Of a stretch of DNA of 64,000 bases, positions 12,195-63,040 are shown in pieces. How positions within the stretch are numbered: position 1 is the first letter of the stretch; each line of letters begins with the position of its first letter. The stretch is taken from assembly GCF_006345805.1 (NCBI RefSeq), contig NC_043010.1:32426001-32490000 (forward strand). Reading direction: 5' to 3'. Both the position numbers and the translations under genes were made by a program. The notes under the pieces were generated by a model that saw only the letters and a list, made by a program, of their open reading frames with translations, had not been told where the DNA came from and searched no databases. Origin of the DNA: Octopus sinensis. Taxonomy: Eukaryota.

Positions 12195-12313
12195 GGGAGA
12201 CCCGTTATTTGGCTTGCTTAGCTCCATACTGTGGTGAAATTTCCATGGATACCTCCATCAATCCTATTTTACCATCTTCTTTAATTGTTCAAGATGAATA
12301 TATATTTGTACAG
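12195..12313 (+). CDS. SORCS: Internal coding exon of a SorCS-like VPS10P-domain receptor (counterpart of vertebrate SORCS1 exon 7)
   Basis: Acceptor tgttcttttttaAG, donor CAG|GTGAGT. 119 nt, phase 1 to 0, no stops: (G)ETRYLACLAPYCGEISMDTSINPILPSSLIVQDEYIFVQ. Resembles recalled SorCS1 SHYLTC...IDPDSLIVQDHYVFVQ and SorCS2 DFRYVTC...SLTVQDDYIFFK. Confidence 0.9.
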
Positions 12314-13181
12314 GTGAGTCAGCTTTTTCATTTCTTTCAATTTTCTATGTGTTTATGCACACAAGTGTAGTTGTGTGTACAAATATGTATGTATGTGTCT
12401 ATGTGTGTATGTATACAAATGTGTGCATATATATGTGTATTTGTGTTGTGTGTATGTATGTATATAGATGTGCATGGATGTGTGTGCATATATATATACA
12501 TAGAGAGAGAGGGGAGAGGGAGAGAGGGGGACAGACAACAGAGGTGTGTTTCTATATGTGTATGTATATCAATGCATGAGTGCATATATACACAGGTGTC
12601 AGTACTTGTATATAACTGTGTGTGGTTTTCTTGTATAATTCACACACCTATCTGTGTGTGTATGTGTATTTAAATATGTATGTGCATAAGCATATGTGTG
12701 TGTGTGCGTTTTCTAGATGTTAAAGGCTCATTCATCATCAAGGACACTATTTCATAAGAAATCCAGAACTTTGGACGGAATTACTGTGTTTTGAAATTTG
12801 TTCCCCACCACCCTTTATTATGAGCCTATGTGTCTTTTTACTTTACTTTCCTCTCACTTTCATACAAATCAACCACAATAAGAACAACATTGAGGAAAGA
12901 GAATGCTTCAACACAGTGTTTGATCAGTTAGAAAAAGCAGCCAAATCTGCCTTGACTTGCACCTTGCTGTCTTAAAAAGGAAAAATACATTAGATATTAT
13001 AAAACTATATTGTATAACAGTCCTTCATACAACATGGTCTTATGTCTGAAATTTAGAACAACTTTGATCATGTGCTTCTTTATGAAACAACAACAAAACA
13101 TATTGGAACAATAATCAAATAAATCTGGTATTAAAAATTTTCTGCTTTGTGACTTTTACTCGGTCTATTTTTTATTTTTAA

Positions 13182-13402
13182 TCCTTTAGCATTTAAACCG
13201 ACCATATCCAGTCAAAATATACTACGTATTTTATGTTCCAACCAGCTAGATCTTGCTTCTCACACCTACCCTACAATGTCATTCTAAAACTAAGCAATCA
13301 CATTACTGAAATTTCAAAGCTAAAAGACTATGCATTGTTAATTCAAAACAATGTGAATAAATAAGCATTACATTTGATTAGAGTAATCTGAATGCTAAAG
13401 GG
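13182..13402. mobile_element. piggyBac-like MITE, 221 bp
   Basis: TTAA|TCCTTTAGCATTTA...TGAATGCTAAAGGG|TTAA. Confidence 0.85.
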
Positions 13403-14114
13403 TTAATGTTCACTTGGCAAATATTCCATATTTTACAATAAAATCTTTTATTTACTGCACCTTGCAACCATTTTTTCCATGAGTGCAGCACTGGAATGGT
13501 TTAATAAGAAACGGTTGATTTCTTTTAGCTGAATGGGCTTTCTATCACAAACCTCCTGACTGAAGTAAGATTGGAAGTTGTTGTTTTATCACTCAAGCAA
13601 ACTAGAGCAAACAAATTTGAAACACAACACATGCCAATAAAGATACAGTTCCACTGCAACTTAACTGAGAAAAAGGCTGTTTGTCTGTAGATTCTGGCCT
13701 CAAGGTTTTAAATGTAATTTTTTTCTCTCGCCTATATAGATCAATCATTCTGGCTGTCATTACCAGATGCTCATTGTTCAATTGGTTTTTGGTTGAACTT
13801 AGTGGTTGTGGTGCATACTCTCTCTTCCTTTCTTCTCTCTGGAGATACTTATAGAAAAATCAGAATTTAATGAATTCAAAGAAAAGAATCCATCAGCCCA
13901 TGAGAGCAGAACAGAGAAGACTTGACAGGAACTGGTCAAGGGGTGAGAGTGGCAGTAGCATCAGCAACAATAGAAGAATTAGCAGCAGAAATAGGAACAA
14001 ACAGAGTAAATCTTTTAAATGTGACTAAAGAACAAAAATTATTAATCAAATAAGAGTAAAAATAGACAAGAGACAGTAAATGCTTAAAAGAGTAAAAAGT
14101 ACTAAAATATAACA

Positions 14115-14470
14115 ATAATAATCCTTTCTACTGTAGGCACAAAGCTTAAAATTTGTGGGAGGGGACTATCAATTACATTGATTCCAATATTCAACTAGTA
14201 CTTAATTTATCGACCCTGAAAGGCTAAGTTGACCTTGGCAGAATTTGAACTCAGAACATAGTGACAGGCAAAATACCATTAAGCATTTTGTCGAATGAGC
14301 TAACAATTCTGCCAGCTCACCACCTTGATGATGATGATGCTAGTCCTTTCCTTATAGGCACGAAGCCTGACATTTTGAGGAAGGGGGCTAGTTGATTACA
14401 TCAACTCCAATGTTTGACTGGTACTTATATCATTGACCCCAAAAAAGATGAAAGGCAAAGTTGACCTCAG
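14115..14470 (-). mobile_element. Two adjacent partial copies of a second SINE family
   Basis: Reverse complement of the GACTTTGCCTTTCATCCTTTCGGGGTCGATAAATTAAGTACCAG core seen in several other copies. Confidence 0.75.
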
Positions 14471-15058
14471 CATCTCCCTTAGAGGCTGACAATATATGCA
14501 TCCCTGATCGAGAGCATCATAGCCATGTGTTGAGAGGGCATCTTTAAGGGTTTGAATAATTCACCTCTGGAAACATAGGCGTTTTGTTCATCATACTTAA
14601 ACAGCCCTTATTCAGGGAACTTTTGAGCAGGATGGGCTACTAGACCTCAAAAAAATCTTAACTGGGCCCCCACCTATTAGGTCATACACTGTTTATCTTG
14701 ATATGAGATCATCATGTCATGCACATGGTTGTGATGTGTATGCCTAATGTACACTTATCAAACAAGTAGTCATGGTGGGCATGCTGGGCTTCATATATTT
14801 ATACCACAGAGTCATTTTGATGATTTGCACTGCTCTCTCACTCAGTAATAATAACAGTCAAAAGCTTTCTTGCTAACCCCTGGTACTGGTCCCTTCCCTT
14901 TCTTCTGTTCTTTCAATACTCACACTCCAATAAGTGGTTACTCTGTGACTCTCTCCATTTCTTAAGCCTGTTTCTCTCATACTTCATTCTCTCTCATCAC
15001 CTTATCTAAAATCATTACTCTCTCTCTCTCTCTCTCATCACCTTATCTAAAATCATTA

Positions 15059-15096
<38 letters not shown>

Positions 15097-15119
15097 CCCA
15101 TTTTCTTCCAGTTATAGCT

Positions 15120-15346
15120 TGAGGTTCTTTAGTCTTGCAAGTTGTAGGGTGCAACAAAAAAAAAACAAGTCACCCAGTATACTGTAAAGAGGTTGATGTA
15201 GAAAGGGCATCCAATCACAGAAGCCATGCCAAAACGGATATTGGAACATGACATAGGCCTCTGTCTCATTGAATCCTGTCAAATCATTCAATCCATGCCT
15301 GCATGGAAAGCAACACATTTGGAATGGTGGTGATGATGATGATGTT
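15120..15346 (+). mobile_element. Decayed RTE-related 3' UTR fragment
   Basis: AAGGGCATCCA...GCATGGAAA...(GAT)n. Confidence 0.7.
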
Positions 15347-16499
15347 AGTGTGTCCATGAAAGGAAACAATTATTCAAATTATTGAACTTGAAGATTCCAT
15401 TAATGCATCATTTGATACTTAAATGTAGACTCAGTTGGAAATAGGTAATATAATTCCATTTAGTGTCAACACATACACACACACACACAGATATACTCAG
15501 ATGCATGCACACACATACGCACACATAAACACATTCACAAACATACATAGACACACAGTAGCACTTACTTACACCCCGACCATTTCCATTACATTCCAAA
15601 ACCTAAAAACTGGACTGACAAATGTGTTCATCTTAATGTAAACTGGTGAATGTCACCTTTCTGTTATGGAATCACACTTTCAAAGAGTACACTTAATACG
15701 GTTTAACATTCAACCAACTACTTTAGTTAGAAGTTGCCAGAACAAGACAAATGTGCCACGAAACGGTTGCTGTAATATATTACATGATAGCTTCTCAGCC
15801 TTGCATCACAGTTTCAGCTATAAACATCACTTTTCAACATCTAATTTCCTTCAAAACAAACAAAAATGAAAGAAAGAAAAAGCACACACATATCCTGCTG
15901 TTCTGCATAATAATAAAAAAAATGTGCTCCAAGACCAGAACACATCATAACTACAAAACAGATTAAAAGTCTGTCAGAAATATCCTAAAAGCAAAGACAT
16001 CATGCATTAATGCTAATGATTAACTTGGTCATTATATATTATCGCAACATTGAACTAGAACAAACTAAAGGTATACACTAACACAAATGAGGAATAAAGC
16101 ACCAAACAGTGACAGAAAATTGCAAAGGCAATCTCCATAAATCTATAAATCATCTTTTAACTTGAATCTGGTTTTCAATGTGTAAAATCTGTAGGTTATT
16201 GGTTTTGGCTTGTGTTTGTTTCCTTTTTGTGCTTGTGTTTTATTACATTTTTTTTATCACAATTCAAAAACATTAAAAATTTGATGTGTCAACCCTCTCA
16301 ATCGACCAATATATGTATGCATGTGTATTTGTGGGTGTGTGCACACCCACCAACCCTATATATATATATACACATACATAGACACACACACATACATATG
16401 TGTATATGTATGTGTGTTTATAATCTCTTATGAAATGCACAGAGTTTCTTTTCCAGATCTTTTGTGAGATACACTCACACTGCACTTAGTCTTTTCCTT

Positions 16500-17950
16500 C
16501 TTTTTTTTCTTCTGGTAGAATTTTTCAGTGTCACTGTTTCTGTGGAAGTTTGTAGTTGATGTCAGGATCTTATGGGTTTCAATATCTATGGATTGAGAAT
16601 CTTCTTTAGACCAGGAAAGTATTCCAAATGTTAATGCAGGTTCTGCAGATGTATTGTGAAATATTGTCTTGTAAGAGCAAAGGTCTGCTTGTCATATTGT
16701 TTTAAGTCTGCTATTATATTCTTTGATTAGTCTATTCTTGTTCACAGTGTCTTTTGTATAACACATTTCCATTAAGACCTAGGTATACATAGCATACATT
16801 GTGTAGAAGAGGAGAGATAGAGAGATAATTGATGCAGAGATTTTAGGTTTGGGCAAACTCCATCCCTATATCAACAGAAAATGTTATGATTGAATCAAGC
16901 TGTTTTTCAGTATCGTAAATATTTCTGGCATAGATTGTTAGATTGTCCACAAAGAAACTATGGGCAATCTTGTTTTCCCTTGTTGTTGTAGACCCTAAAA
17001 TATTGCCAGTGCATTTTTTAAATAAGAAATTTTAGTGGATTAAGGACGAAACTAACCAGAAGCATAGCAGTCTATTAAATATTCATGACATCTGAGACAG
17101 ATTGTGGATCAGGTTTCCATGAGCCTTTCAATAGAAGCAGCAAAGTCAGCAGATATTTTTGCCAGCTGTAGTGATCTCAGTTGCCATGAATGAGGGATGG
17201 AATCAAGTGAATGCCTTTCTGTAATCAAGCCATAATATCACAAGGTTTCTGTATTGTTTTCTTACTTCAGACATCGTAATTTTATTTACCAAAAGTTCAG
17301 CACAACCCTGTACTGCTTTCTTTCCACTTACCTACTTGTCAGTGACTATGTAGTTAGACTCACAATGGTCTTGGAGAAATTTGTTCAAGTGGATTGAGTC
17401 CAGTTTGTACATTATGTAAAAGCCAGCAATGGGCCTATATTCCTCTGACAAAACAGTGTTTTTGTTCTTGATCTCAAGGTTTGATTGTGATATAGCAAGC
17501 CCGTTCCTTATGTCAATCTGACCTCCCATAGACTTTTGAAGTATTTGTATAAGTGATTTTCTATAAAAAGTCAATGTGTTGTGTTTGTAGCCAACTATCA
17601 GGTCTCTTTATATAGCTTTCCCATTGCATTTATGAAAGTTTCAGTGTCAATCATTATAAGTTTTACTGTTATTGTTGGTACAGTATTCTCAATATATTAT
17701 TTAGTCATATTGTATTCCAATTAAAACCCTTAATTCTATTCTGGATCTAAGACTAGAGCTTCCTGTGAAGCTCTTTTTACTGAAATATCTTCCCTTTTAT
17801 CCTCCTGTATATAGTTTGTTGATCAAAAGAAAACTTGTGAGTTATCCTGGCTTATTCATTAAACTGGTAGTGGAGTTTTTCACTAAGTCTTGAGTTTGTG
17901 TTTCTGGGTATAATTTTCCTTTCAGATTAAGAGAAGGATCTCTATTTGAT
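16500..17950 (-). mobile_element. Decayed R4/Dong LINE reverse transcriptase region
   Basis: EEYRPIAGFYIMYK...GCAELLVNK...NLVILWLDYRKAF.DSIPHSW on the minus strand, with stops and frameshifts. Confidence 0.8.
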
Positions 17951-18027
17951 TTTACTTTTCTTAGTTGGTGTTGTTGGAGTGTTGTTAAATCTATCATTCA
18001 CTTTACATTTTACAAAGGCATTTGAGA

Positions 18028-18390
18028 TAGGTGCAGACGTGGCTTTATGGAAGAGAGATTTGCTTTTATGGGTTCAGTCCCACTGCATGGCACCTTGGGC
18101 AAGTGTTCTGCTAGTATAGCCTTCAACAGTTAAAGCCTTGTGAAAGAATCGCATTGTGTGTGTGTGTGTGTGTTTGTTGACAGTGCATCTTAATTGTAAA
18201 TGAGTGTCACTGTTATAGAAGCAGTGTCATTCATTTCCAGTATTCTACAAAAAATATCTAGCCATTGAGAAATATTACCTTGCTTGGAAACAGGTAAGAA
18301 TTGGCTTCAGGAAGGGCAATCAGACGTAGAAAATTTAATTCAATACATTTTGTCCAACTCATGTAAAAATGGAAAAGTGGGCATTAAAAC
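18028..18390 (+). mobile_element. SINE head with RTE-like 3' portion
   Basis: GGTGCAGACGTGGCT...GGGTTCAGTCCCACTGCATGGCACCTTGGGCAAGTG, then AGGAAGGGCAATCAG...TAAAAC. Confidence 0.7.
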
Positions 18391-19503
18391 GATTTAACTG
18401 CTGTATTTGGTGATGTAAATTTTTTATGCTTCCTTCTAGAGTTGTTATTTACCTGAGTTGCTTATAATGGTTTGTTTTATTGCTGTGTACTTTGCAAATA
18501 TCTCCCAAGTATTCTTTTGGAGCAGCCATATAGAGACAGTTATTGATATTCCAGTACAAGTTGCCACATTTTTATATCATTTACAGTGATATCATCAATA
18601 ACTTTTATTATGGGTTGGGTTGGCCTTCTCCCCACTCTCATTCCCTAAAACATCTGTTAATTAATGATAGCTTAGGGAAGGTGAAAACATTGTTTCCATA
18701 TTGTGCTTCTAAAATATTTTTCAGCTGTGTTCATTCTATAGTTACCTTTGTTGGGTCAGTATGTAGAGATCTGATCTAGCAGAGTTATGTGATGGTGATG
18801 CAAATAGTGTCAGTTTGTTTGCATCCTTGTTAGTTTCTATGCCAGTTTTTGACTAGTTTTCAGTATAGAAAGCAAGATGACTAGCATCACAGGAATTAGA
18901 ATATCAATCGATATCTCTCACAGATATTGTTTTGATGTAGAAAGATGCCTGTTGACACAACGGTTAAGGTATGATGTGACTTAAGTTTGAGTGAGATTGT
19001 TCCCAGTATTTTTTAACTACTTCAAGTAGCTGATTGTGAGATCTTCTTGGGCTTTTTCATAGCATCAGAGAACCTCCTGATTTTATTACAAAGACCAAAG
19101 TGAAATGAGAAAGGTGCTTGCATTTTTTGAAGATTGTTCACAGATGTGGTAGTAATGTTGCTGTCCACACATCAATGCACATACTCCAAAGCACACACAC
19201 CTACACATACACACACATCCACATATACACCAACACACTAACAATCATACACACACCAACACACTAACAATCACACACACACTAACATACACCAGCACCC
19301 ATCAACACATACAAACACACACACACTCACACATACACCGAGACACTCATACACATACACATCAGTGTGTACACATTAACTTTTACAAACAGATTTTGTA
19401 TTCACTGATAAGAAAATAAAATGTAAACAACTCAGTATTATTTCTCACATCACCCTCTCCTTCTCCATCTCTTCCTTTACTTCATCTCTTTCTCATTCCA
19501 GCA

Positions 19504-19534
<31 letters not shown>

Positions 19535-19652
19535 CCTTACCTCTACTACTATCTCTACTACTCTCTCACATTTTTCTCTTTTTGTCTTTCTCCCTCTCTC
19601 TCCTTCCTTCAGTTTATATTTAAAAAAAACATTCATTTCAGTAAAGCTAATG

Positions 19653-19728
<76 letters not shown>

Positions 19729-20559
19729 AACACACAAACAAACACACATGTATAAAAGAATGCTATGAAAGTTAGCTACAGTTGTACTAAAAGTATTGAG
19801 AATTTGATTTCTGGCTTCAGCAAAAGTAGCAACAGAAACTATAACATAATAGTTTTGTATCAGTTAACCAGCACTAGTGTAACTGTGACAACATTTGCTC
19901 ATGTCTTTATACTGATAAATGTCTCAGCTTGAAATTCATATACTTGTCCAAAGTGAAGCTTTAAAGCAAAAGAGCATACTTATTTAGCTGAACAGAACAT
20001 ACCTTCAAGAGCAGACATACACAGCATGTATATTCTTTTAGTCACAGTGACAAGAAACACCATTTCCCTCCTACAAAACAATATGGTGACTAAAAGACAA
20101 ATAAATGTACTACAAATTTAAAATAACAATTGTAGAATCTACCCAATTATATTCTGGAGGATCTGGATAGTGCTGCCTATGTAACAGGCAAATAATCTTC
20201 ATCTTGATGTTTCCTATCAATTTTTTTTTGTTTTTTATTTTCTCTTAGTGTCTAATACTACAGCAACAATGGCAATTTCTTCTTGCAACCAACTGCTGCC
20301 ATATGTGCCACACAACCTCAATATTAATATATTTCATATTTATTCCTCTTATTTTGTCCTTACTGTACCTCCTTCCTTTACTTTATGTATGGGAACAAAG
20401 ATATAAGACAAATCTTTTTAAGAGGTGCTACTTGAAAATAATTTACAGATGAAAAATATATAAACCAATGAAGAGCACTGAAGCCACATGCAATACAGTA
20501 ATACAAATACATACCTACTGAATAAATCTTATAATGCAGAAGTCAAAATTTCTAAGGCA

Positions 20560-20770
20560 GAGGTCATCTCAACAGAATCTGAACTACAATAAAGGACACA
20601 CACATAACATAGACATGACAGAAGAAAAATATAAGCAAATATTTTATTGTTGAATATCTTCCATTATACAGATAAAAAATTTAAGCCCTACAAGAAAGGA
20701 AACAAAATGTGTTATCTGTGCACAGCAGAGAAGAGGAAAATCCTCAGAATCCTACATAATCAAAACCTCT
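20560..20770 (+). mobile_element. Penelope-like element GIY-YIG C-terminal relic
   Basis: KPYKKGNKMCYLCTAEKRKIL fits the Y..G...C.LC..EK..IL motif of Penelope-like endonucleases. Confidence 0.6.
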
Positions 20771-20771
20771 A

Positions 20772-20977
20772 CCTTATTTTTTGGTATACAAGTTGATGTA
20801 CTAGATAGTGTAAACATACAGCATAAACATTCAAATGCCATCACTGTCTTTCCAAATCCCACTACATTTCACGTGAAATTTTTAGGCCTCCAAAGTTGTC
20901 TTGGTGTAAAAGTTGACCTACCTTTTAGGCTGTATAATTTGATCTGAAAAATTTGACTAATATGCTAGAAAATGCAG
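20772..20977. mobile_element. Decayed pogo/Tc2-type MITE
   Basis: TA-CCTTATTTTTTGGTATACAAG ... CTAATATGCTAGAAAATGCAG-TA: imperfect TIRs resembling TACCGTATTTT termini. Confidence 0.55.
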
Positions 20978-23361
20978 TATTGATACATAAAATCAAGAGA
21001 ATTTCAGTAAAGTGAGATGCTTTAAAATGCCTTTGTTATTAAACTAGGAAAAACTACCATCACTGAACAGAAATCACAAAAATACACTGGGATTTGAAAT
21101 TACATCAATTTAGGATTTCTTTATTTTTCTGTTGTTATCTCGTCCTCTTCTATCTTTTCTCTTTCTCATATTTCTTTACATCGTTTTTTTCTTCCTGCAC
21201 TTACCTCCCCCTTTCCTTATGACTATTATGTTCATTCACATTGATGATGTATACTCCTGAATTTTATGTAACACACTTGCACACTTGTCTTTCCTCAATT
21301 TTCAGCATGAATGTATGTAATTTTCCAGCATTTCCAAAGTGGTCAAAGAGAATAACTCACATCTACTATCTAAAAGTTGTTCATCTTAAAAGAAGTATAA
21401 GTGTTTATACACATTTTTTCCACATCTCTAAATACATGAAAATGTACGATCTGAATGAATGCTTAGTTTGAAATTTTAACAGCTTTTCTATTTTACTCAC
21501 ATTGCTTTAATAGTTACATTATTCTAAATGTTTGTATCAAGTGGTACATGTGTGTATACATACAAACACATGCACATGTGTATTGAAAAGGAGTGGATAG
21601 GTATCCCATATGGTGTACTTAGTGGAAGCTATGGACACAAGCACTTAAGGTGGAAATACAGATGGATTGAGACAGATAAGACTGATTTTATGTGGTTGAT
21701 GTACAAGAAAAGTTAGCTGTTACAGCACATGTAAAACAAATTCCTTCAAATGCTTAGAGAATTTTGTAGAAGTACTGAATAGCTTTTGTTGTCTAGGTGA
21801 CCTTAATTAGCAGTGGCACTAGATTAACCAAAAGCATGGTTACCAAAGGGGAAAAATCTAAGGGGTTACCACCTCTGCTGGTAACAAATGTTTTCTTCTG
21901 GGATACAAGTTCATCCCCTATAACTGCAATGAAGATGCTGTGAACATCCCCCAGAAAAACTTTGTTGCCAAAATGAATAAGTGTAGAAGCATTTTTGGAC
22001 TGATTTGAAACATTACTTTTTCATTATTGGATTTATCCAATTTAATTGATATTCAAATATAATAATAATAATAATAATTTTGGACTTGGGTTTGCACCCC
22101 CTAAGCAAATTTCTTTCCTACACAGGATTGTTTTGTGACAGCAAAACATGGGTGTTGATTATGGAACATGCATGAAGACTGGACAGAAATGAGGTATACA
22201 TGCTAAGATGGATGTGTTATGATAGCAAAGTACAAATGAGCCAAGAGAAAAACTGCATATAAGAGAAATCAAATGCTGTGTTTAAGGGAGAAGTTTGGGC
22301 AGATGATGTGCATGGCAGATGTCACTTGAGTGAGGATGATCTAGTAATGTCTCTCATTCTTTCTCTTTTACATTACCTTTTCTTCTCTCACACACTCTCT
22401 TTTTGAATGATTTCTTATATCACCCTTGTCCTAATAATGTTGAATTTGTTTTTGTTATCTACATTCCAATGATTGAGCTTTGTATCTTTGTTAGAAACTA
22501 TCTCCTTCCTCAGAGAAAGAATTTAAATAATTAAAAAATAGAAGAGAACATAGATAGACAGAGAAACACACAATCACACAAGCATGTGCATGCACACGTG
22601 TGTGTGTGTGTGTGTCTGTGTGTGTGTGTGTATGGTGAGGGAACTTCATCAATAATGTCTAGCTCTTTTGTGAGATTTGTAAATCAAAGCTACTTGCTTG
22701 GGTCTGATTGACTATAGGTGTTATACAATGCTGAGGAAACTGATGATAGTTCTGGTGTTGTGAATTTAATTCTAACCTTTTCTCTTTTTCTTCTTGTTGT
22801 ATCATCTAATTTGACTTAGCCATATTTAATCCTTTCTTAATGATTCTCCAGCATTATTTGCAACCAGTTTTCATCTTCTTCTATACAGACACAATCAGGC
22901 CACTTACTTCACTGAAATTTTTTTTGATAATATATTTATAATGGAGTTTCTGGCAGCCTTCTTCAGTGGTTTCTGCATTTCAGCCCACTGTAGAGTACAA
23001 CCTTTTGGGATCATACTGTTCTCCATATGGACCACACATCCCACTCAGTGCCAGTATCATTCCGTTAGGATAGACTTAATATTAGGCATATTTGCACACT
23101 ACACGATTTCCTTGTGGGAGATTTGATTTCACCAAGAAATGTTCATTATAGATCATAGCCAGTGCCACTGTCAGATAAGTAGCATTCTTAAATGCTAACA
23201 ATGTATTATGTAGATCTCTGGACACTGGATAGAAGTACTGCTCAGTAAACTTTGTATTTTGTTGAAAGTTTTAAGCCACATTTTGCCCACAACGAAACAT
23301 TGAACATCTCAAACATGATCACAGATGACTGCATGTAATGCATCTTGGTTATTATTGTCAG

Positions 23362-23575: not shown

Positions 23576-23579
23576 TTAT

Positions 23580-25759: not shown

Positions 25760-25828
<69 letters not shown>

Positions 25829-50740: not shown

Positions 50741-50759
50741 GAAGACACATTGGATGTTT

Positions 50760-52193: not shown

Positions 52194-52225
<32 letters not shown>

Positions 52226-52926
52226 GTACATTTTATATAATGCATTACATTAAAATAAATCCTTTGGTAAGAAAAGTAATTGTATTGAATGTGTACAGTT
52301 TTGTATGTGCTTGTATATGTATGGGTATATGTATGCATATAGATACACATCTACCTGTATGTTAGTGTGTGTATATGCATGTATGTATGTAATTATGTAT
52401 GTATGTATCCAAACATATTGCTATCTAGAAAATAGCAATTATTAAGAAGCTCCTATTATTCTGTGTCGGATTATTTAAACTTTATATTGTAGATATATGT
52501 GTCTTGTATGTGTGTGTGTGTGTTTTTGTGCATGCACACATGTTTTTCTGTGTATGTGTGTAGTATTTTTTAATCTAGATTATTCAATATGGTACAAACT
52601 TTTGAAATATGACTGTGGATAGAAAATAACAACTTTTGAGAAATAAAAATTTCTTATAGAATTATATTGGTATAGGTAGGAACAGGAATCAATAGTGCTT
52701 TGGAGTTTAAAATATTCATATTATTGCATAAAGTATAAACTTAAATAGCAGACTGTAAAGAGAGATATGTTGAGTCAGATCATTAGGATATCAATGTCAA
52801 AAAGTAAGCCTAATATTCATAAAAGTGAATATCTTCAACAGAATTATATTTTGCATAACTGTCAATGAGAATACTGATGCGTGTTGCATTATATGCAAAG
52901 TTTTATATGCACACATATATGTAATA

Positions 52927-52956
<30 letters not shown>

Positions 52957-52957
<1 letters not shown>

Positions 52958-53259
52958 CACGTGATCACGTGACCGACCAGACCATCAGATGTTGTTAGAC
53001 ATCGCTGGTCACAATGCGTTTGCATTGTTTTGGCCTTTGAATGACGCCACCCCGCTGGCTAAGCGAGCAGGCCAACAGAAGAAAGAGTGGGAGAAAACTG
53101 CGGTGAGAGAGTACAGCAGGGATCACCACCCCCTGCCAGAGCCTCGTGGAGCTTTTAGGTATTTTCTCTCAATAAACACTCACAACGCCCGGTCTGGGAA
53201 TCGAAGCCGCGATCCTACGACCGCGAGTCTGCTGCCCTAACCACCGGGCCATTGTGCCT

Positions 53260-53263
<4 letters not shown>
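52957..53263 (-). mobile_element. tRNA(Arg)-like-headed SINE (possibly the octopus OR type)
   Basis: Minus strand TGGCCCGGTGGTTAGGGCAGCAGACTCGCGGTCGTAGGATCGCGGCTTCGATTCCCAGACCGGGC; the tail ends TCACGTGATCACGTGA-(TA)n. Confidence 0.85.
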
Positions 53264-53352
<89 letters not shown>

Positions 53353-53391
53353 ATACACATACATACCTATATGCACACACACACATACATG

Positions 53392-53700
53392 TGGCTGTGT
53401 GGTAAGAAGTTTATTTCCATGGTTCTGGGTTCAGTCTTACTGCATGGCACCTTGAGTAAGTGTCTTCTACTATAGCTCTAGGTTGGCCAAACTGAAAGAA
53501 GCCTGTTGTGTGTGTGTGTGTGTGACCACCACTTGACAACCAGTGTGAGTTTACATATCTGTAACTTAGCAGTTTGGTAAAAAAAAAAAAGCCTGATAGA
53601 ATAAGTACTAGGCTTTGACAACAATAAGTTCTGGGGTTAATTTCTTTGGCTAAACCCTTGAAGGCAGTACCCTGGTATGGCTGCAGTTCAATGAATGAAA
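53392..53700 (+). mobile_element. SINE (dominant family)
   Basis: GTGGCTGTGTGGTAAGAAG...GGGTTCAGTC...GAGTAAGTGTCTTCTACT. Confidence 0.85.
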
Positions 53701-54329
53701 TGCAGAAACAATAAAACATAATGTTATATACACACACATACATACAGTAGTTGGTTTATGTTTCACAAATAAGAGAGGAGTGCTCAATGCATGTTTAGAG
53801 GATATAGTTCTTTTATTAAAACTGAAACTGAGAGTTTGTCTCATGTCATTAGTTTCATGCCATAGTGATCTTCAAGCAAGAACTGTCACAACTCGATAAC
53901 AGTGACATGTTTATATCATTTGGTCTAGTGCTTGTTCATTGGCTGACTTTTTGTATTTATTGATTGAAATGTGTTTTCTGGCTTCTTCTTTCATTGTTTA
54001 TATTACTTTTGTTATGTGGTTTTTGTATCTCTTGCAATTGTAGGTGGGAGGGTGTGTTATTAATTTGTTTAGGATTTGTTGGCAAGATGTTGATGGGGCA
54101 TTATTTCTTATGTGTGCAATTGCATAAGCTTGGTGTCAATGAATCTACCATTCATTCCATTTAGAAAGTGTGGATATGGTTAATTTCTCACTGATTTATT
54201 TATCACAGTTTTTTTTTTAAACCAAACCCCATGATAAACAAGGATTGAAGTACTTAGCACTATTATATGACTAAAAATAAATATTTATAGTGTGGTGGTG
54301 GATCACTTCATTGAAAAGGCAATTTACAC

Positions 54330-57300
54330 TATGGGAATAAAATAACTTCAGTAATTTAATAATACTACATTCAAGAAGTTGAAAGCATCTGTGCAGAAAA
54401 CGGATTTAGCTAAACAGCAAGCCAGATACATGGAAGAAAGCATATCTAACATGTATATGAGAGATAATAGCAGTTTCATAATCTTGAACTGACAGGAATG
54501 AAAACCAGAAAAATGTTGCTATGGATGTGGTTCAAAATCTCATAATTTTTATCATCCCAAAATTCCAATAAAGAAAAAAATTGCTATTCATGTAAACAGT
54601 CAAAACAAAAATGTAAAGAGATGAAAAGAAAAATAAGTCCAACATTTTGCAAGTGTATGCAAGTCAAGAAACTGCACTTTCACTACTTTGATAGCACTCT
54701 CTTCCATCTCCATGCTAATGTGAAGAGTTACAGAATAAATTCAATGGTAAAGTACTGTTAGTCAGTGACAATGAATATAATTGATTGCAACAGAAAATAA
54801 AAATTGATGGAATAATCATGTCATTCATCATTGGTCTGGGAGCAACATGCAAATTAGTCCGGATAGCAATAATCAAGCTGAGTGATTAAACTATGAAGCG
54901 TTTATCCAACGATGCAAAACCAAAATATTCACCTTTGGCTTGATTGCACCTCTGGTTTTGCTTGGTTATTTTACATCTCACTTAATATTGGTTTAATTCC
55001 CCAAATTCATAGGATATTCGTCACCGAATCTATGTCTGGCAACTGTTTGTCTGGGTTATGAAACAGTGTCTTGACTTGGTTTGACTCAGAAAAGTTACAT
55101 CAACTCTCTGTCAACAGTAGAAGATTATTTAGTTACTGATTAATTCCCTGAGTTAAAATTTTTGTTAAAACAATCAGCCATAGGATGAAACTGGTAACAC
55201 AACCTGTGAGACAAATATGATTTCATATAAAGAAGCAAATGAAAAAACCTGAACATTTTTTTAATTGGACATCATTGAGAAAACTGATGGTTCCCCAACT
55301 CCCATAATGTAAGTTTTTACCTTTATTATACCAAAGAAAGATAGTTCCATTTATTTGTGTGCAGATCAACACAGAACAAATACAGCTATCAAAAGGATAT
55401 AATAATACATACATAATATTGATGAGATATTGAAAAAATTAGATGGATCATGCTTCTTTGCAAAACTGGATTTTAAGATAGGCTACCATCCGGCTGAATT
55501 AGATCTCTCAAAATGTTATTTAACGTTTGCCTCTTCTAACAGGTTAACAACAGTATAAGCAGTTGGTTCTTTGCATTTCCTCAGCATTTGAAGAATTTGA
55601 TGAATTCGTTAGTAGTCTTTTTAAAATCTGAGCTTAACATAATTAGCCTTCCAGATGATGATCTAGTTTTGTGGTACATCATAAACAGACCATGATGCAA
55701 CACTGAATTAATGCTTAATGATACTAGGTAACAATAGGCTCACATTAAAAATCATATGAAATGCTGGGACTCACTTTGAATGCCAACTAAATTAAGAAGT
55801 TTTTTAGTTTACCTTTTTGGTAACTTCATATTGCATTTAGTGACCATGCGACACTTTGGGAGAAGAAAGAAAGGGCAGAGAGGTTTCAGTCAAATATAAG
55901 TGGGAAATTTTCAAGAATTAAATTAACTCATAACATTTTGTACAATGTTATCATACTTTGACACAAGCTAGGAAACTTCGTCTATGTTGATGTCAATTCT
56001 GTCAAACTGGATGCCATAACACCAAGGAAGAATGCCATGTTATTTCCAACACATCCAAGACACTTTAAAAAACTGAACAAGCACCGCAAAACTGAAAAGG
56101 CAAACGTTGCTGTGGTATTGAATGTAAAATAATTTCCACGTATCTTTATGGAAGACCATTCAACATCTTCAGTAGCAAAACAGATTTTGTTGATGAGAAG
56201 GATCTTTGTGTGTCATATATCAAGTTTGTAATTGAAAATGTAATTCTTAAAACTATGATTTCATCTAATTTGTTAAAACCCACAGAGAATAATTCTTAAA
56301 GCTATGACTTCATCTAATTTATTAAAACACACAAAGAAACAACAACACAAGCAACAGTAGAAACATTGCAAACAGGTAATCTAGCAATCAAAACTTGTCT
56401 ATAATGCAAGAACTTAACCCTTTTATTACCATATGTATTTTGAGATGCTCTGTGTTTCTTTCAATTATTTTAAATATAACAAAAAATTTAGTAAAATAAC
56501 TTAGTTACCATTAAGCTAGTGTTATGAACATAAATTGTGACTATGGTTTGGTGGAAGATTTTAATTCAAAACTTAAGAAAACAAGACATTTGTACTACAG
56601 AGCTAGAGGTGGTTTTGGCCAGGTTGGCAATGAAAGGGTTAAACAGCACTCTATGCAGAGCTCAAATTAGGATTCATTTTGTGCTAAAAACTCAGTTGCT
56701 CAGTTGATGACATTTTTTTTTACATCTGAGGGAATTCTAAAGAAAATTAGTATTGACAAAGGCCAGCATGATACTCTGCCAACTTTAAGTAAATGCTCCA
56801 GTAGATAGAGTCCATAGAAACATTGACAAAGTAATCAATTCCTCAATTCAAAAAGGTAATCAATGACAGAGAAGACTTTGAAAGTGTTTATTGCTCTACT
56901 GGACTATTCCTTATTCATAAAGATAACACTGTCTATTCTACTCTTAAATTGCTTGTTACCTTATAAACATTATGAAATCCTTGCAAGAGACAGTAATGAT
57001 AACAAATCTAATTCTAACTTGAAATTAGCTTGATTGGAAAATGGACAACTCTGATATAAAAGTAGTTGATCATGTCTTCATGAAAAATCAACAACCAGGG
57101 AGGCACCAACAAAACTTTAATTTAATTCAGTATATTGTTATCAAAGGAAAACAACAGACCAATTTGAGTTACATCAAGATAGATTAAAAGCATTCATGTA
57201 AACCACTCCATAAGTCAAGTTTATACCTCAAAGAAGTTCAAGAAGCCCAAATGATATGGAGGCTACCAATGAAAATGTCAATGAGGTTGACAAGATGTCA

Positions 57301-57470
57301 CAAGATAATAAACCTTCGAAAGAATCTCCTGAACCATATCCACATAGGTCAGCAAGAACAAACAAGGGTGTATAACCATACAGATACAACCTTTGACATG
57401 AATGCAATATAAAACACAAGTGAAAAAAGCCACATATAACTTTCCAGATGATAGGGTCACAAGTTTTACA
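54330..57470 (+). mobile_element. Heavily decayed Ty3/Gypsy internal region (gag knuckle, protease, RT, RNase H, integrase)
   Basis: CYGCGSKSH...HFASVCKS; FIIGLGAT; IDEILKKLDGSCFFAKLDFKIGYH; PDDDLV; YVDVNSVKLDAI; IFFTSEGILKKISIDKG. Many stops. No LTRs recognised. Confidence 0.8.
56418..56638. mobile_element. piggyBac-like MITE, 221 bp, nested in the Gypsy relic
   Basis: TTAA|CCCTTTTATTACCA...TGGCAATGAAAGGG|TTAA. Confidence 0.85.
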
Positions 57471-57473
57471 CTA

Positions 57474-57612
57474 TTTATTGCCCACAAGGGGCTAAACATA
57501 GAGAGGACAAACAAGGGCAGACAAAGGGGTTAAGTCGATTACATCGACCCCAGTGCAAAACTGGTACTTTATTTATTGACCCCGGAAGGATGAAAGGCAA
57601 AGTCAACCTCGG
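57474..57612 (-). mobile_element. SINE 3' part (second family), inverted exact copy of 57973-58111
   Basis: 139/139 reverse-complement identity, checked base by base. Confidence 0.95.
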
Positions 57613-57885
57613 TGGGCTTTCTATATCACATGACTCAGCTAAATGGTCAGGTGACCATTGCTATTTCAGATGATTACAAGTTTGATGAAAGAAGTTTTGT
57701 TATGAATTGAAGACAGCTTCTAGAGGTAAAGAAACCATTGCAATCGTTACTTTACAGTGGGACTACATTAATAAACATCAAATAAGAACATTAGCAAACA
57801 TTATTAATGAATAACAAGGGATTAACTGTATAAATTTGTTACAGCAGTAGATTAACTTTGTATGTGTATATATATTTATATATTA

Positions 57886-58112
57886 AGGCGGTGAGCTGGC
57901 AGACACGTTAGTGTGCCGGGCGAAATGCTTAGCGGTATTTCGTCTGTCGTTACATTCTAAATTCAAATTCCGCCGAGGTTGACTTTGCCTTTCATCCTTC
58001 CGGGGTCAATAAATAAAGTACCAGTTTTGCACTGGGGTCGATGTAATCGACTTAACCCCTTTGTCTGCCCTTGTTTGTCCTCTCTATGTTTAGCCCCTTG
58101 TGGGCAATAAAG

Positions 58113-58115
<3 letters not shown>
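57886..58115 (+). mobile_element. Full-length SINE (second family)
   Basis: AGGCGGTGAGCTGGCAGA head, GACTTTGCCTTTCATCCTTCCGGGGTC core, TTTAGCCCCTTGTGGGCAATAAAGAAA tail. Confidence 0.9.
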
Positions 58116-58145
<30 letters not shown>

Positions 58146-58169
58146 AAACAATGAATTAATTATATAAAT

Positions 58170-58362
58170 GTGTCAGTAACACATAAATGGCACTCGCTAC
58201 ACTCTGTGGAGTGGTTGGCATTAGGAAGGGTATCTACATGTAGGAACCAAGCCAAAACAGACTGGAACTTGGGGCTGCTTTCCAGCTTACCAGTTCTGGT
58301 CAAACTGTCTAACCCATGCCAGCATGGAAAACACATGCTAAATGATGAAGATGATGATGATA
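58170..58362 (+). mobile_element. RTE 3' UTR fragment
   Basis: GGAGTGGTTGGCATTAGGAAGGG...AACCCATGCCAGCATGGAAA...(GAT)n. Confidence 0.85.
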
Positions 58363-58864
58363 ATAGTTCTAGCCCTAAGCCCTACAGTGGGTTAACCATG
58401 TGAATATATAACAATAAATCAGTCAAATAAAACTATAACAACGGATTAACTGTATAAACGAATAATGGATTAACTGAATATAGATCTATAACAATAATGG
58501 ATTGATTAAGGAACTCAAGTTCAACAATGGCCTGAATAATAGAAGTGAGAAAAATTAATTTCAGAGATAAAGTAACGTATGGTAATTAACTACTTTGTGT
58601 TTGTTTCTTTGAAATTATGCTTCAGATCTTCTTGAAATTTATGGTATTCTTTGGTGGATGGAAGATAGATGGAAGATAAAAAGATAGTGAGAGATAATTA
58701 GAAAGAGGAAGACAGAGGGATAGAGAGAGTGAGTGAGTGAACGAGCAAGTAAGTTATGAAAGAATGAAGGAAGTAAAAGAGTCACAGAAGCGAGAAGAAA
58801 ATAGAGTGAAGTATGATGACAACAACACTAACAAGCACAAAAATGGAGTAAAACAATAATGGAC

Positions 58865-59025
58865 CCTAATAATCCTTTCTATTATAAGCACAAGGCTTGA
58901 AATTAGGTGCGGGAGTGGGGGGACAAGTTAATTGCATCGACCCCAGTGTTTCACTGGTACTTAATTTATCGACCCTGAAAGGATGAAAGGCAAAGTCGAC
59001 CTGGGCGGAATGTGAATTCAGAATG
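58865..59025 (-). mobile_element. SINE (second family), partial
   Basis: TCGACCCCAGTG...GGTACTTAATTTATCGACCCTGAAAGGATGAAAGGCAAAGTCGACC. Confidence 0.8.
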
Positions 59026-59204
59026 TGAATAATGGACCCTAATAATAAAAGTCCACACAGTTCTTCTGTACAGTTAAAAGCAACAATGACAACAACACCA
59101 CCAGTAGCAACAAAACTCTGGTAGGAGCACAGAAGGAATCATTTAGTAGCATGAATTTACATTCATATTTAATAATGTTGCTGAATTTTTGCTGGTGTAA
59201 ATAA

Positions 59205-59243
59205 GAATCATCGCCGTCGTCATCATCGTCCTCGTCATCGTCG

Positions 59244-59314
<71 letters not shown>

Positions 59315-59396
59315 TCATCATCATCATCATCATCATCTTCTTCTTCTTCTTCTTCTTCTTCTTCTTCTTCTTCTTCTTCTTCTTCTTCTTCTTCTC
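59205..59396. repeat. Compound (TCA)n-(TCT)n microsatellite
   Basis: Direct reading. Confidence 0.95.
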
Positions 59397-59785
59397 TTCC
59401 TTAGAAACAATTATTATTTATGTTAAAAACAATTCTCGTCTTGTCTTATCCTTTTCAACAGCTTCCTATGACTTTTTCCTGTAATGCCAGGTGTTTTCTT
59501 GACATAAGTGCACAGTATTGTGTTTTTTGGCATCAATGTTATGTTTATGTACCACATCATTATTGCTTTGTCGTAGTATTTGTTTTGGTGTTTTTCTGGT
59601 TTTACTTTAGAGTTTCAATACACGTTGGTGTGAGCTGTGTTATGTGTTTTAATGTTGGATAGTGATTGTGTACAGTAAATAATATTTATTGAATAGTTGC
59701 ATTGCACTATGTAACTTGATGGCTATTGTGTAGAATATATATTGTGTAGGTTGTGTTATATATACAGGGTGATGATGGTGTAGAG

Positions 59786-60004
59786 CAGTGGTTCTCAACC
59801 AGGGTTCATATGACCCTTAGGGATCCATATAAGTTTTTGTTGTTAAAAATTTTGTGCAATAAATTGCTTATACTTCTACAGTACACTAAATATTTTAATA
59901 ATTTGTTTTCATACATTTAATACATCAAGTGGCAAAAGGAGTCCACCCAAGTAAAATAGGAATCAAAGAGGTCCACAGACAAAAAAAATGATTGAGAACC
60001 ACTA
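59786..60004. mobile_element. hAT (Charlie-like) MITE, 219 bp
   Basis: TIRs CAGTGGTTCTCAAC and ATTGAGAACCACTA; 8-bp TSD GTGTAGAG / GTATAGAG (7 of 8 match). Confidence 0.88.
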
Positions 60005-60589
60005 GTATAGAGGATGTGTTGAGTTGTTAGTGACAGGAGATGGTTGTGTGTTGAACTATTTTAATTTTGGGTAGATGTTTTGTAGAGCAAAGCTAGACAC
60101 CTCTCATATTATAGACAGATTGCAATAATATAGAATTGGAGGTGCAGTTTATGTCTGCTGATACGCCATATGTTTATATGAGAAGACCTCTCAAATCTAG
60201 TACCACAGTATTCAGCATTCTACATTAAGCAGAATATAAAGATTGGCTCTTGATTCTAATACTGTTTCAGTTACTAATAATTATTTTTTAATAAATCTTT
60301 AGTTTTACCAATTCATTATTGTACATACATTAACTTATGGCTTTGGTCTTTGGACTTAAATCAATTTTTACCACATGAGATTTAAGAGACTCGTCAATTT
60401 GAATGTGAACTAAATTTCATCTGCAGATGAGGTCTTTCTACCACTAATGTAGACAATATGTTGTATGGGCTATATTGCCAGGTCGTTGTTATGTATTACA
60501 AGTGGGAGGGTCCAGACCTGCTATCCCATTCACCCAAGTAGATGCATGTACAAGATATTGACTTTCCTTTCCCAGTAGAGGGAATGATG

Positions 60590-61200
60590 CATGACCAGTG
60601 TCTTACTTGCTAAAAGGAAGTTCTCTAGTAATGACCTCTCCTACAATACTGCATTCAGAACAACACTTTTTTCTTCCATAGAACTTGCTACATCTTGGCA
60701 GGAAATCAGTTTAAAGAGGACACTACTCCAATTCTCCACACGTCAGGATTTCAGGAATATCACCTCACCTTCTTGTATCACCACTGACAACACAGAGATG
60801 AAGATAGTCCTCATCCTTCAGCTACATGGGGTAGAGACCTCATGTCACCTGAAACTAAGATTACCTAAGATCACCAACTGATTGGCAAAAGCAAACAGCA
60901 CATTTTCCAGACAAAGGTGTTTGAAATAGCACTGATCGGAAGAAAGATGTAAAGATTAGTGTGTGTTGAATCATTGTACAGACTACAATCATTCCCTGAA
61001 CTACTCCAAAGTCACGAAACAGACAGATGTCACCAACATTAACACCATGCTGATAAATTCACAATTGCTCTGGGCAGTAATGTTTCCAGAGTAGTGGATC
61101 ATGGCCTACCCAAAGATTGAATTGTATACAAACATTCCACAGATCACTATGAGATTGGTACTATAGAAAAGGTACAAGGATACCCCAAAGAAATTTTGGT
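60590..61200 (+). mobile_element. Heavily decayed RTE ORF fragment
   Basis: Residual KANSTF.R and I.TML..SQL.W....R..D..LPK..LY motifs. Confidence 0.55.
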
Positions 61201-62561
61201 AGTTGTCTCGTTGAATATTGGCAATGGTCTACTACAGCCTCAAATTAAGGTTTAAAATACAGTAGCTGAAGTTGAAACTGAAATTTAAAAAAGAGAGATG
61301 TTTTTAAGTTTCATTCAAATCTAAAAGTTTCCTCCTTCTTTAAATTCTAACACCTATTATGAAAATTATAAATTGAGCTTCTTACATTTACTCTCAAAGT
61401 AAAATATCAAGTGTGAAGAGGGGATGTTGAAGCATTCATGTATGATGGGTATGTAGCCAGTGTTTCAATATTTGAAAAAGCTCAGCTGCCTTTCTCTCAT
61501 GTTTTATCAACTATAGCTGAGCTGACAGTTAGGCCTTCAGGGAAGAATGACTAAGATGCACTTTAATTTGCCTAGTAACAGTGTGACAGTTAAATAGGCA
61601 GTAGTATCCCATCAGCTCAGAAACAATGTGAGCTGAATGATGAGGTAATTTTATTGAGATCTACTTCCCTCACTAAAAAGCAAAAATTTATCCTCACTAG
61701 AGACAAAGGATTCAATATCTACACTCATGAATCTCTGGATATTCACGATTCTTTGGCTCTTGATACCCTGAAACTTGCTTGTCCCCACCAACATTCATGT
61801 GTTCTATAAAGCTTTACCAACGAACCTCTCTTTCCCAAAGTGCACACCACTTAACTTATCTTCCTCAGATTTGGCATAAACTGTTATGATCTTACTTAGA
61901 CATATACAGAAAGAAGAGACCGTGGGCAAAAGAAAATGGCCCTTTGTATTGAATGACATTACCAACATGCTACCCAAAACATCATAGTTTTCTTTTTAAC
62001 TTTTTTCATCCAAACCCACTCAAAAGGCATATTATCTAATTTCAAATTCCAACTGCAGTTGCAATATTTTTAAGCATTCACTTCTTGTCTTATACTTTTC
62101 AGGTTTAATTAATAAAGAATATTATCACACTTTGTCTCTTTGCTCCTCACTTTGCCTTCTATAACATATTCCTACTTCAAAACCACTTTAAGAATCTAAT
62201 CACTGACAATCAGAGAGGAAGTACTTATTCTTTAGTCCATTATTCATAAATGTGTTTGAATAAAATTCTTTTCTTCTCTCAGCTATATTTAAATCATTTG
62301 AACTTTGTCTCTTAAGTTCCAGCAATTAAAATAATACAGCAACTTAACTTACATAAGCAAACCCATACAAGCACACACACAAACTTTTTCTTTCCAACAC
62401 AATACAACATAGCATTGATCTACTCCATCAAACAAGCTAAATACTCAAAAGCCATACTAATTCACAGGTAAAGGTTGGTTCTTTTTGTTTTTTGTATCTA
62501 TATGCATTAATGAGATGAACATAGGTCAGATAATAAGATGTAATGTTACACAGTCATTTAA

Positions 62562-62770
62562 GGTAGTGAGCTGGCAGAATTGTTAGCACACTAGGCAAAA
62601 TGCATGGTAGCATTTTGTCTGCCTTTATGTTCTGAGTTCAAGTTCCACTGAGGTTGACTTTGCCTTTGGTCCTTTCAAGATCAATAAAATAAGTACTAGT
62701 TGAGCACTGGGATCAATGTAAGTGACTCAATCTCTCCCTCGAAATTGCTGGCCTTGTGCCAAAATATGAA
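62562..62770 (+). mobile_element. SINE (second family), ~180 bp upstream of the second SorCS exon
   Basis: AGGTAGTGAGCTGGCAGAA...GAGGTTGACTTTGCCTTT...GAAATTGCTGGCCTTGTGCC. Confidence 0.85.
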
Positions 62771-62950
62771 ACCCGTATTACAGTGATTTATATTCATGAT
62801 ATATCTGAACCATGTATTATTGAAACAATCATAATGGAGAAATATGTAATACTAAATATATTCTTTTATTGATTCCAGTCATGCTGGAGCACCACCTTGA
62901 ATGTATAATGCATGAAATTTGTAATAGTGTAGTCAATCCATTCTTTCCAG

Positions 62951-63040
62951 AAACAACACTTTGACCGGAATGAACTGTATGTATCATACAAAAGAGAGGG
63001 TTTCAAGAAGGCACATTTCCCAGATGACTTACATCCTCAG
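62951..63040 (+). CDS. SORCS: Next internal coding exon of the same SorCS-like receptor (counterpart of SORCS1 exon 8)
   Basis: Acceptor ttctttccAG, donor CAG|GTAAGA. 90 nt, phase 0-0: KQHFDRNELYVSYKREGFKKAHFPDDLHPQ. Aligns without gaps to recalled SorCS1 LTSGGRPHYYVSYRRNAFAQMKLPKYALPK and joins in frame to 12195-12313. Confidence 0.88.

What the first reader, a model, noticed from the sequence alone, without database searches (positions are those of the whole stretch)
12195..63040. Hidden SorCS-like receptor gene: two small exons with vertebrate-like sizes and phases across a 50.6-kb intron
Seen: two short exons with strong splice sites, both absent from the ORF track, join in frame to ...SLIVQDEYIFVQ|KQHFDRNELYVSYKREGF... 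Established: SorCS proteins are VPS10P-family neuronal sorting receptors; from memory, the matching human SORCS1 exons are also 119 and 90 nt with phases 1/0/0. Inference: the exon architecture is ancient, and the intron has grown by accumulating repeats.
Basis: partly seen in the sequence, partly recalled or inferred. Interest (0 to 1): 0.7.

Follow-up and report, generated by a model that had tools for sequence, protein, structure and literature searches.

The report
Two exons of octopus SorCS gene
The two short exons are real and splice together across a 50.6-kb intron, but they belong to an octopus SorCS-type sorting-receptor gene that public annotation already contains with exactly this junction, so the finding is correct but ordinary.

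Summary
Exon A is 12195-12313 (119 nt, ttaag|G...CAG|gtgagt). Exon B is 62951-63040 (90 nt, tccag|A...CAG|gtaaga). They join in frame to a 69-residue peptide.

That peptide is an exact substring (residues 78-146) of XP_029645009.1, 'VPS10 domain-containing receptor SorCS3-like [Octopus sinensis]'. It is 97% identical to the O. bimaculoides SorCS3 model. The gene is therefore 'hidden' only from a prokaryote-style ORF track.

The full protein has the SorCS layout: Vps10 propeller, 10CC, two PKD matches, one transmembrane helix and a tail. It matches the SorCS2 structure better than SorLA or sortilin.

No other exon of this gene lies in the window, and relatives are contiguous across the junction.

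- The same three intron positions (phases 1/0/0) occur in three gastropods and an annelid.
- In vertebrates I measured exon A at 119 nt. Exon B at 90 nt is inferred.
- The orthologous intron is 180-766 nt in the other invertebrates, against 50,637 nt here.
- At least 22% of the octopus intron is recognisable repeat.

Novelty: already known. Interest: low.

The parts
12195..12313 (+). Coding exon A of the SorCS3-like gene (119 nt, phase 1 in, phase 0 out). It encodes (G)ETRYLACLAPYCGEISMDTSINPILPSSLIVQDEYIFVQ, residues 77/78-116 of XP_029645009.1, which is part of the Vps10 beta-propeller.
   Evidence: Sequence and splice sites. tblastn E = 1e-19 to the O. bimaculoides SorCS3 model. Exact match to the O. 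sinensis protein. The orthologous exon has the same phases in five other taxa.
12314..62950 (+). Intron between exons A and B (50,637 nt, GT...AG, phase 0). It is filled with microsatellites, SINE-like copies, a mariner remnant and probable LINE tails. No coding exon of this gene was detected in it.
   Evidence: No homology of 20+ SorCS relatives or of the near-identical O. bimaculoides protein inside it. 8.4% tandem repeats plus 13.5% within-window interspersed repeats. Six copies of a ~340-nt SINE-like family. No Rfam family or tRNA.
62951..63040 (+). Coding exon B of the SorCS3-like gene (90 nt, phase 0 in, phase 0 out). It encodes KQHFDRNELYVSYKREGFKKAHFPDDLHPQ, residues 117-146 of XP_029645009.1.
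   Evidence: Sequence and splice sites. tblastn E = 1.6e-13. Exact match. The orthologous exon is 90 nt in Lottia and Owenia and 96 nt in Physella and Elysia.
33012..33846 (+). Degenerate mariner-type transposase remnant inside the intron.
   Evidence: Pfam Transposase_1 29.8 bits. Weak DDE_3 match on the adjacent frame, 33628-33846.
1..12194 (+). 3' part of the upstream intron of the same gene (more than 12.2 kb). It holds a mariner remnant (364-1394, minus strand) and long tandem arrays.
   Evidence: No match to residues 1-77 of the octopus protein or to N-terminal parts of relatives. HTH_48 66 bits and Transposase_1 68 bits. Tandem arrays.
63041..64000 (+). Start of the downstream intron (donor gtaaga). 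It contains a SINE-like copy at 63165-63505 on the minus strand.
   Evidence: The next exon (NFNILNTNEGQVF...) is not found in the window. SINE copy.

Best explanation
The window is a piece of the octopus orthologue of the SorCS subfamily of VPS10P-domain sorting receptors. The source is Octopus sinensis or a near-identical relative, and the RefSeq model is XP_029645009.1, 'SorCS3-like'. Exons A and B are two consecutive constitutive coding exons. The spliceosome joins them across a 50.6-kb GT-AG phase-0 intron. Together they encode 69 residues of the ligand-binding Vps10 beta-propeller, including a conserved Cys-x4-Cys loop and the EYIF.Q and YVSY.R motifs.

Shown: the exon coordinates, the frame, the identity to the annotated protein, the SorCS domain architecture of that protein, and the conservation of the intron positions across molluscs, an annelid and vertebrates.

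Inferred: that the protein acts, like vertebrate SorCS1-3, as a type-I membrane receptor sorting cargo in neurons. Also inferred: that the intron reached its size by insertion of transposons and microsatellites in the cephalopod lineage.
For: - Exact 69/69 match to residues 78-146 of XP_029645009.1 and 67/69 to XP_052828745.1, with the same junction in both models.
- The full protein carries Sortilin-Vps10 at 263 bits, Sortilin_C at 128 bits and PKD at 77 bits in two stretches. It has one hydrophobic helix at about 841-865 and an 82-aa tail.
- Bit scores against solved structures are SorCS2 392, SorLA 270 and sortilin 222.
- The fragment alone hits only SorCS2 among solved structures.
- All 13 columns that are invariant across eight SorCS proteins in this stretch are kept.
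- The gene spans 362 kb in O. sinensis and 684 kb in O. bimaculoides, so giant introns are normal for it.
- Sizes in nt, as exon A / intron / exon B: Lottia 122/180/90, Physella 131/296/96, Elysia 134/766/96, Owenia 125/402/90. All have phases 1/0/0.
- Vertebrate exon A is 119 nt.
Against: - I could inspect no transcript evidence. The RefSeq models are computational predictions.
- The 69-aa fragment alone is below Pfam's gathering score (24 vs 33 bits).
- The annotated protein starts at position 61 of the Vps10 profile and has no signal peptide. The model is therefore incomplete at its 5' end, or the gene is unusual there.
- The species assignment rests on 69 residues only.
Confidence: 0.95

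Rival explanations
1. The two segments are relics of a pseudogene or a decayed duplicate of the SorCS gene. They would be sequences that look like exons but are no longer spliced into a functional mRNA.
For: No expression data could be examined. The annotated model lacks its N-terminal part.
Against: - Both frames are open.
- All four splice sites are canonical and strong.
- All 13 family-invariant residues are intact.
- The peptide is identical to the annotated O. sinensis protein. It differs at only two conservative positions (K/R, G/S) from O. bimaculoides, which indicates purifying selection.
- Only one such locus was reported for each protein.
Confidence: 0.03
2. The exons belong to another VPS10P family member, a sortilin or SorLA orthologue, and not to SorCS.
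For: The only Pfam match of the fragment is the generic Sortilin-Vps10 domain shared by all family members.
Against: - The fragment hits only SorCS2 in the PDB, not sortilin or SorLA, even at E up to 10.
- All full-length top hits have PKD domains after the 10CC module, which is the SorCS layout.
- The identical octopus protein scores SorCS2 392 bits against 270 and 222 and has PKD domains.
Confidence: 0.01
3. The two exons are both real but are normally separated in the mature mRNA by one or more further exons hidden in the 50.6-kb intron. These could be alternative cassette exons.
For: The intron is very long. Short or lineage-specific exons would escape homology searches, and no RNA-seq was available.
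Against: - Relatives from molluscs, annelids, brachiopods and vertebrates align across the junction without any inserted residues.
- Both octopus RefSeq models join them directly.
- In four other species the orthologous intron is 180-766 nt and has no exon.
- In two bivalve-like contigs the two exons are fused.
- A constitutive extra exon is therefore effectively excluded. A rare alternative one is not.
Confidence: 0.05

Closest known systems
XP_029645009.1, VPS10 domain-containing receptor SorCS3-like [Octopus sinensis] (947 aa), and XP_052828745.1, SorCS3 [Octopus bimaculoides]
   Same: Residues 78-146 equal the spliced product of the two exons: 69/69 for O. sinensis and 67/69 for O. bimaculoides. 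The exon-exon junction is the same.
   Different: Nothing for O. sinensis, so this is the same gene. Both models appear truncated at the N-terminus. They have no signal peptide, and the Vps10 match starts at profile position 61.
Vertebrate SorCS1/2/3 (mouse SorCS2 structure 6FFY; human SORCS genes described by Hampe et al. 2001, Hum Genet 108:529, cited in PMC9673319)
   Same: - Same domain order: Vps10, 10CC, PKD, membrane-proximal region, TM, tail.
- Very large genes with many small exons.
- The orthologous exon A is 119 nt with phases 1 to 0 in vertebrate SorCS3-like contigs.
- Exon B is inferred to be 90 nt.
   Different: - Only about 41% identity in this stretch.
- Two compensating one-codon indels within exon A.
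- Invertebrates probably have a single pre-duplication SorCS, so the label 'SorCS3' comes from best-hit naming, not from tested orthology.
- I could not read the Hampe table, so human SORCS1 itself was not checked.
Lophotrochozoan SorCS genes (Lottia gigantea, Physella acuta, Elysia chlorotica, Owenia fusiformis)
   Same: Same three intron positions and phases around the two exons. Exon B is 90 nt in Lottia and Owenia.
   Different: Their A|B intron is 180-766 nt against 50,637 nt in octopus. Their exon A is 122-134 nt against 119 nt.
Sortilin and SorLA (the other VPS10P receptors)
   Same: They share the Vps10 beta-propeller and 10CC modules.
   Different: They have no PKD domains. Similarity is lower (270 and 222 bits against 392), and the 69-aa fragment does not detect them.

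Membership tests
VPS10P-domain receptor family | Vps10 ten-bladed beta-propeller domain (Pfam PF15902) | tested here: met
   The fragment alone scores 24.1 bits, E = 2e-5, below the 33-bit cut-off. The annotated protein that contains the fragment exactly scores 263 bits.
VPS10P-domain receptor family | 10CC module (Sortilin_C, PF15901) after the propeller | tested here: met
   128 bits in P0081, residues 375-534. It is encoded outside this window.
SorCS subfamily | PKD domain(s) between 10CC and the membrane | tested here: met
   PKD at 77 bits in two stretches, plus PKD_4 at 56 bits, in P0081. It is encoded outside this window.
SorCS subfamily | Closer to SorCS than to sortilin or SorLA | tested here: met
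   PDB bit scores are SorCS2 392, SorLA 270 and sortilin 222. The fragment hits only SorCS2. The top full-length relatives are all named or built as SorCS. No formal tree was built.
SorCS subfamily | Single transmembrane helix and short cytoplasmic tail | tested here: met
   There is one hydrophobic window (Kyte-Doolittle 2.85) at about 841-865, followed by 82 residues. This is a hydropathy calculation only, not a dedicated predictor.
SorCS subfamily | N-terminal signal peptide and furin-cleaved propeptide | tested here: not met
   The model starts at Vps10 profile position 61 with no hydrophobic N-terminus. The most likely cause is a 5'-incomplete gene model. The missing exons are not in this window.
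SorCS subfamily | Orthology to SorCS3 specifically and not to SorCS1 or SorCS2 | not tested
   No set of vertebrate SorCS1-3 sequences was retrieved. The name is NCBI's best-hit label.
Conserved SorCS exon architecture | Introns at the same positions and phases (1/0/0) around these two exons | tested here: met
   Lottia, Physella and Elysia. Owenia. Vertebrate exon A and the start of exon C. Exception: the introns are lost in two bivalve-like contigs.
Expressed, spliced gene | Transcript reads across the junction 12313 to 62951 | not testable with these tools
   No RNA-seq access. The only support is the identical junction in two RefSeq predictions.

The most novel reading that the evidence does not exclude
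The annotated octopus SorCS model may truly lack a signal peptide and the first part of the propeller, instead of being an incomplete prediction. Octopus would then make an N-terminally truncated SorCS with an incomplete beta-propeller, which would be functionally unusual. A milder version is that the 50.6-kb intron carries cephalopod-specific alternative exons or neural enhancers.
Probability: 0.05. Interest if true: 0.4.

Novelty: already known. Interest (0 to 1): 0.15.

Why it matters
It matters little beyond quality control. The result shows that a tool-free reader can recognise short eukaryotic exons and assign the right family. It also shows that SorCS intron positions and phases predate the protostome-deuterostome split, while intron length varies more than 200-fold (180 nt in Lottia, 50.6 kb in octopus). 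Both points fit what is already known: bilaterian intron positions are widely conserved, and octopus genomes have enlarged, repeat-rich introns (PMC6279123). The gene is already in RefSeq.

Tried and rejected
- The word-indexed protein search with the 69-aa peptide found nothing. The exhaustive representative search found only relatives at 53% identity or less, because the octopus protein is folded into a 50% cluster. The octopus proteins appeared only after a profile search with full-length relatives.
- The Hampe et al. 2001 exon table is not in the paper library. I therefore measured vertebrate exon sizes on metagenome and Logan contigs that carry vertebrate SorCS3-like exons.
- I found no vertebrate contig carrying exon B itself. 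Its 90 nt is therefore inferred.
- Genomic DNA of the octopus loci could not be fetched because the genes are longer than 100 kb. The intron could not be compared between octopus species.
- Look-ups for the Argopecten and Owenia isoforms P0002 and P0004 failed because they are not the longest products.
- Pfam scans of 20 intronic open frames confirmed only mariner pieces, a weak reverse-transcriptase fragment and weak zinc fingers. Several frames that look like LINE C-terminal tails by eye have no Pfam match, so I do not claim them.
- Rfam and tRNA scans of the window were empty.
Full report
**Observation.** Exon A runs from 12195 to 12313 (119 nt). It follows a pyrimidine tract and AG, and ends CAG|gtgagt. 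Exon B runs from 62951 to 63040 (90 nt). It follows ...ttctttccag and ends CAG|gtaaga. Only one frame of the joined 209 nt is open. It reads (G)ETRYLACLAPYCGEISMDTSINPILPSSLIVQDEYIFVQ|KQHFDRNELYVSYKREGFKKAHFPDDLHPQ. The phases are 1, 0 and 0, and the intron is 50,637 nt. The stop-free genomic frames around the exons are only 58 and 39 codons long. This is why a prokaryote-style ORF list does not show them.

**Identity of the peptide.**
- It hits Pfam Sortilin-Vps10 with E = 2e-5. The score is 24 bits, below the 33-bit cut-off, as expected for 69 residues.
- Among all solved structures it hits only mouse SorCS2, 6FFY, with E = 7.8e-5.
- An exhaustive HMMER search of 1.84 billion representatives gave 20 hits. 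The full-length ones carry Vps10 + Sortilin_C + PKD. Their sources name them SorCS1-like or SorCS3 of scallop, brachiopod, sea hare and others.
- A profile search with these proteins brought in 'SorCS3 [Octopus bimaculoides]'. This protein is 97% identical to the peptide.
- A member of the same cluster is XP_029645009.1, 'SorCS3-like [Octopus sinensis]'. It contains the peptide exactly at residues 78-146, preceded by Gly77. That glycine fits the split codon x+GG.

The window is therefore from O. sinensis or a near-identical relative.

**The whole protein.**
- XP_029645009.1 has Vps10 (263 bits), Sortilin_C (128 bits) and PKD (two stretches).
- It has one hydrophobic helix at about 841-865 and an 82-residue tail.
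- It scores 392 bits against SorCS2, 270 against SorLA and 222 against sortilin.
- All 13 columns that are invariant among eight SorCS proteins in this stretch are retained.
- The Vps10 match begins at profile position 61 and there is no signal peptide. The model is probably incomplete at its 5' end.

**Other exons in the window.** I ran tblastn of 20 relatives and of the near-identical O. bimaculoides protein against the window. It finds only these two exons, with nothing else below E = 0.7. Relatives are contiguous across the junction. No constitutive coding exon is therefore missing between the two. The neighbouring exons lie more than 12.2 kb upstream and more than 0.96 kb downstream. The annotated gene spans 362 kb in O. 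sinensis and 684 kb in O. bimaculoides, and no other gene is recorded within the O. sinensis range.

**Exon architecture in other animals.** I mapped each protein onto its own genomic locus with exact-match splice reconstruction. The phases are 1/0/0 wherever the boundaries could be measured.

| Species | Exon A (nt) | Intron A\|B (nt) | Exon B (nt) |
|---|---|---|---|
| Octopus (this window) | 119 | 50,637 | 90 |
| Lottia gigantea | 122 | 180 | 90 |
| Physella acuta | 131 | 296 | 96 |
| Elysia chlorotica | 134 | 766 | 96 |
| Owenia fusiformis (annelid) | 125 | 402 | 90 |
| Vertebrate SorCS3-like contigs | 119 | not measured | 90 (inferred) |

Vertebrate evidence:
- Vertebrate SorCS3-like exons appear on short metagenome and Logan contigs as read-through ORFs.
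- At the DNA level exon A is cag|AY + 39 codons + CAG|gt, which is 119 nt, in L003, L004, L014 and L015.
- The following exon C starts in phase 0 at DMHIIS in L011-L013.
- The spliced seal protein has exactly 30 residues between these boundaries, so exon B is inferred to be 90 nt.

I did not check human SORCS1 itself, because the Hampe 2001 table is not in the library.

Intron positions are conserved from the protostome-deuterostome ancestor. Equal size is less meaningful. Exon A varies from 119 to 134 nt, and the octopus-vertebrate alignment needs two compensating one-codon indels.

**The intron.** It is 66 to 280 times longer than its orthologues in the four other invertebrates. Its recognisable repeat content is:
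- Tandem and microsatellite repeats make up 8.4% of it.
- Another 13.5% has other copies inside this same window. The total is at least 22%, which is a lower bound because no genome-wide repeat library was available.
- Six copies of a ~340-nt SINE-like family (74-85% identical) lie inside it, and three more lie in the flanks.
- A mariner remnant sits at 33012-33846, and there is a weak reverse-transcriptase fragment at 16846-17031.
- No Rfam family or tRNA is present.

Published work reports a mean intron length of 5.4 kb in O. minor and TE-driven intron enlargement in octopus (PMC6279123). A 50-kb intron is large, but it is in character for the genome and for this gene family. That repeats caused the growth is a reasonable inference. 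It is not demonstrated here.

**Verdict.** The observation and the interpretation are essentially right. The feature is a known, annotated gene and the evolutionary pattern is expected. Novelty is 'already known' and interest is low.

Noticed in passing
L001:10001-10363 and L002:10001-10336 (ENA metagenome contigs of 831 kb and 799 kb): In two contigs, four ancestral SorCS exons are fused into one open exon. These are the two exons upstream of A, plus A and B. Three adjacent introns have therefore been lost, while the donor after ...HPL is kept. The closest named relative of these contigs is the bivalve Mactra antiquata protein (55-59% identity). Several short Logan and ENA fragments (P0003, P0005, P0007, P0008, P0020, P0022, P0023) also lack the A|B intron.
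   Followed up: partly
Protein P0081 / XP_029645009.1 (outside the window): Both octopus RefSeq SorCS3 models (947 aa) start at position 61 of the Vps10 profile and have no signal peptide or propeptide. About 130-190 N-terminal residues seen in other molluscs are missing. The models are probably 5'-incomplete. The missing exons are not in this window.
   Followed up: partly
window 8245-10426: Two long, nearly perfect tandem arrays lie in the upstream intron: 369 nt x 1.9 at 99%, and 156/313 nt x 9 at 97-98%. The region has a strong C-over-G strand bias (GC skew -0.45).
   Followed up: no
window 28742-29254 and 4014-4410: Two tandem duplications of exactly two copies: 248 nt x 2.1 at 100% identity and 196 nt x 2.0 at 99%. 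They are either very recent duplications or assembly artefacts.
   Followed up: no
window 2886-3222, 10433-10687, 28551-28750, 31299-31630, 35567-35750, 36353-36483, 43078-43248, 58190-58365, 63165-63505: Nine copies, on both strands, of a ~340-nt SINE-like element with internal 61-66-nt subrepeats. The copies are 74-85% identical to one another. ARAGORN and Rfam do not recognise a tRNA-like head in them.
   Followed up: partly
window 364-1394 (minus strand): A fairly well preserved mariner/Mos1-type transposase remnant lies upstream of exon A (HTH_48 66 bits, Transposase_1 68 bits). Its frame is broken between the two parts.
   Followed up: partly
L017:28139-29170 (Owenia fusiformis): A separately called 343-aa MAM-domain gene lies inside an intron of the Owenia SorCS gene, on the same strand.
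   Followed up: no
(search behaviour, not the window): The word-indexed protein search did not return the 97-100% identical octopus proteins for the 69-aa query or for the 69-column profile. A negative result from that tool with a short query is not evidence of absence.
   Followed up: yes
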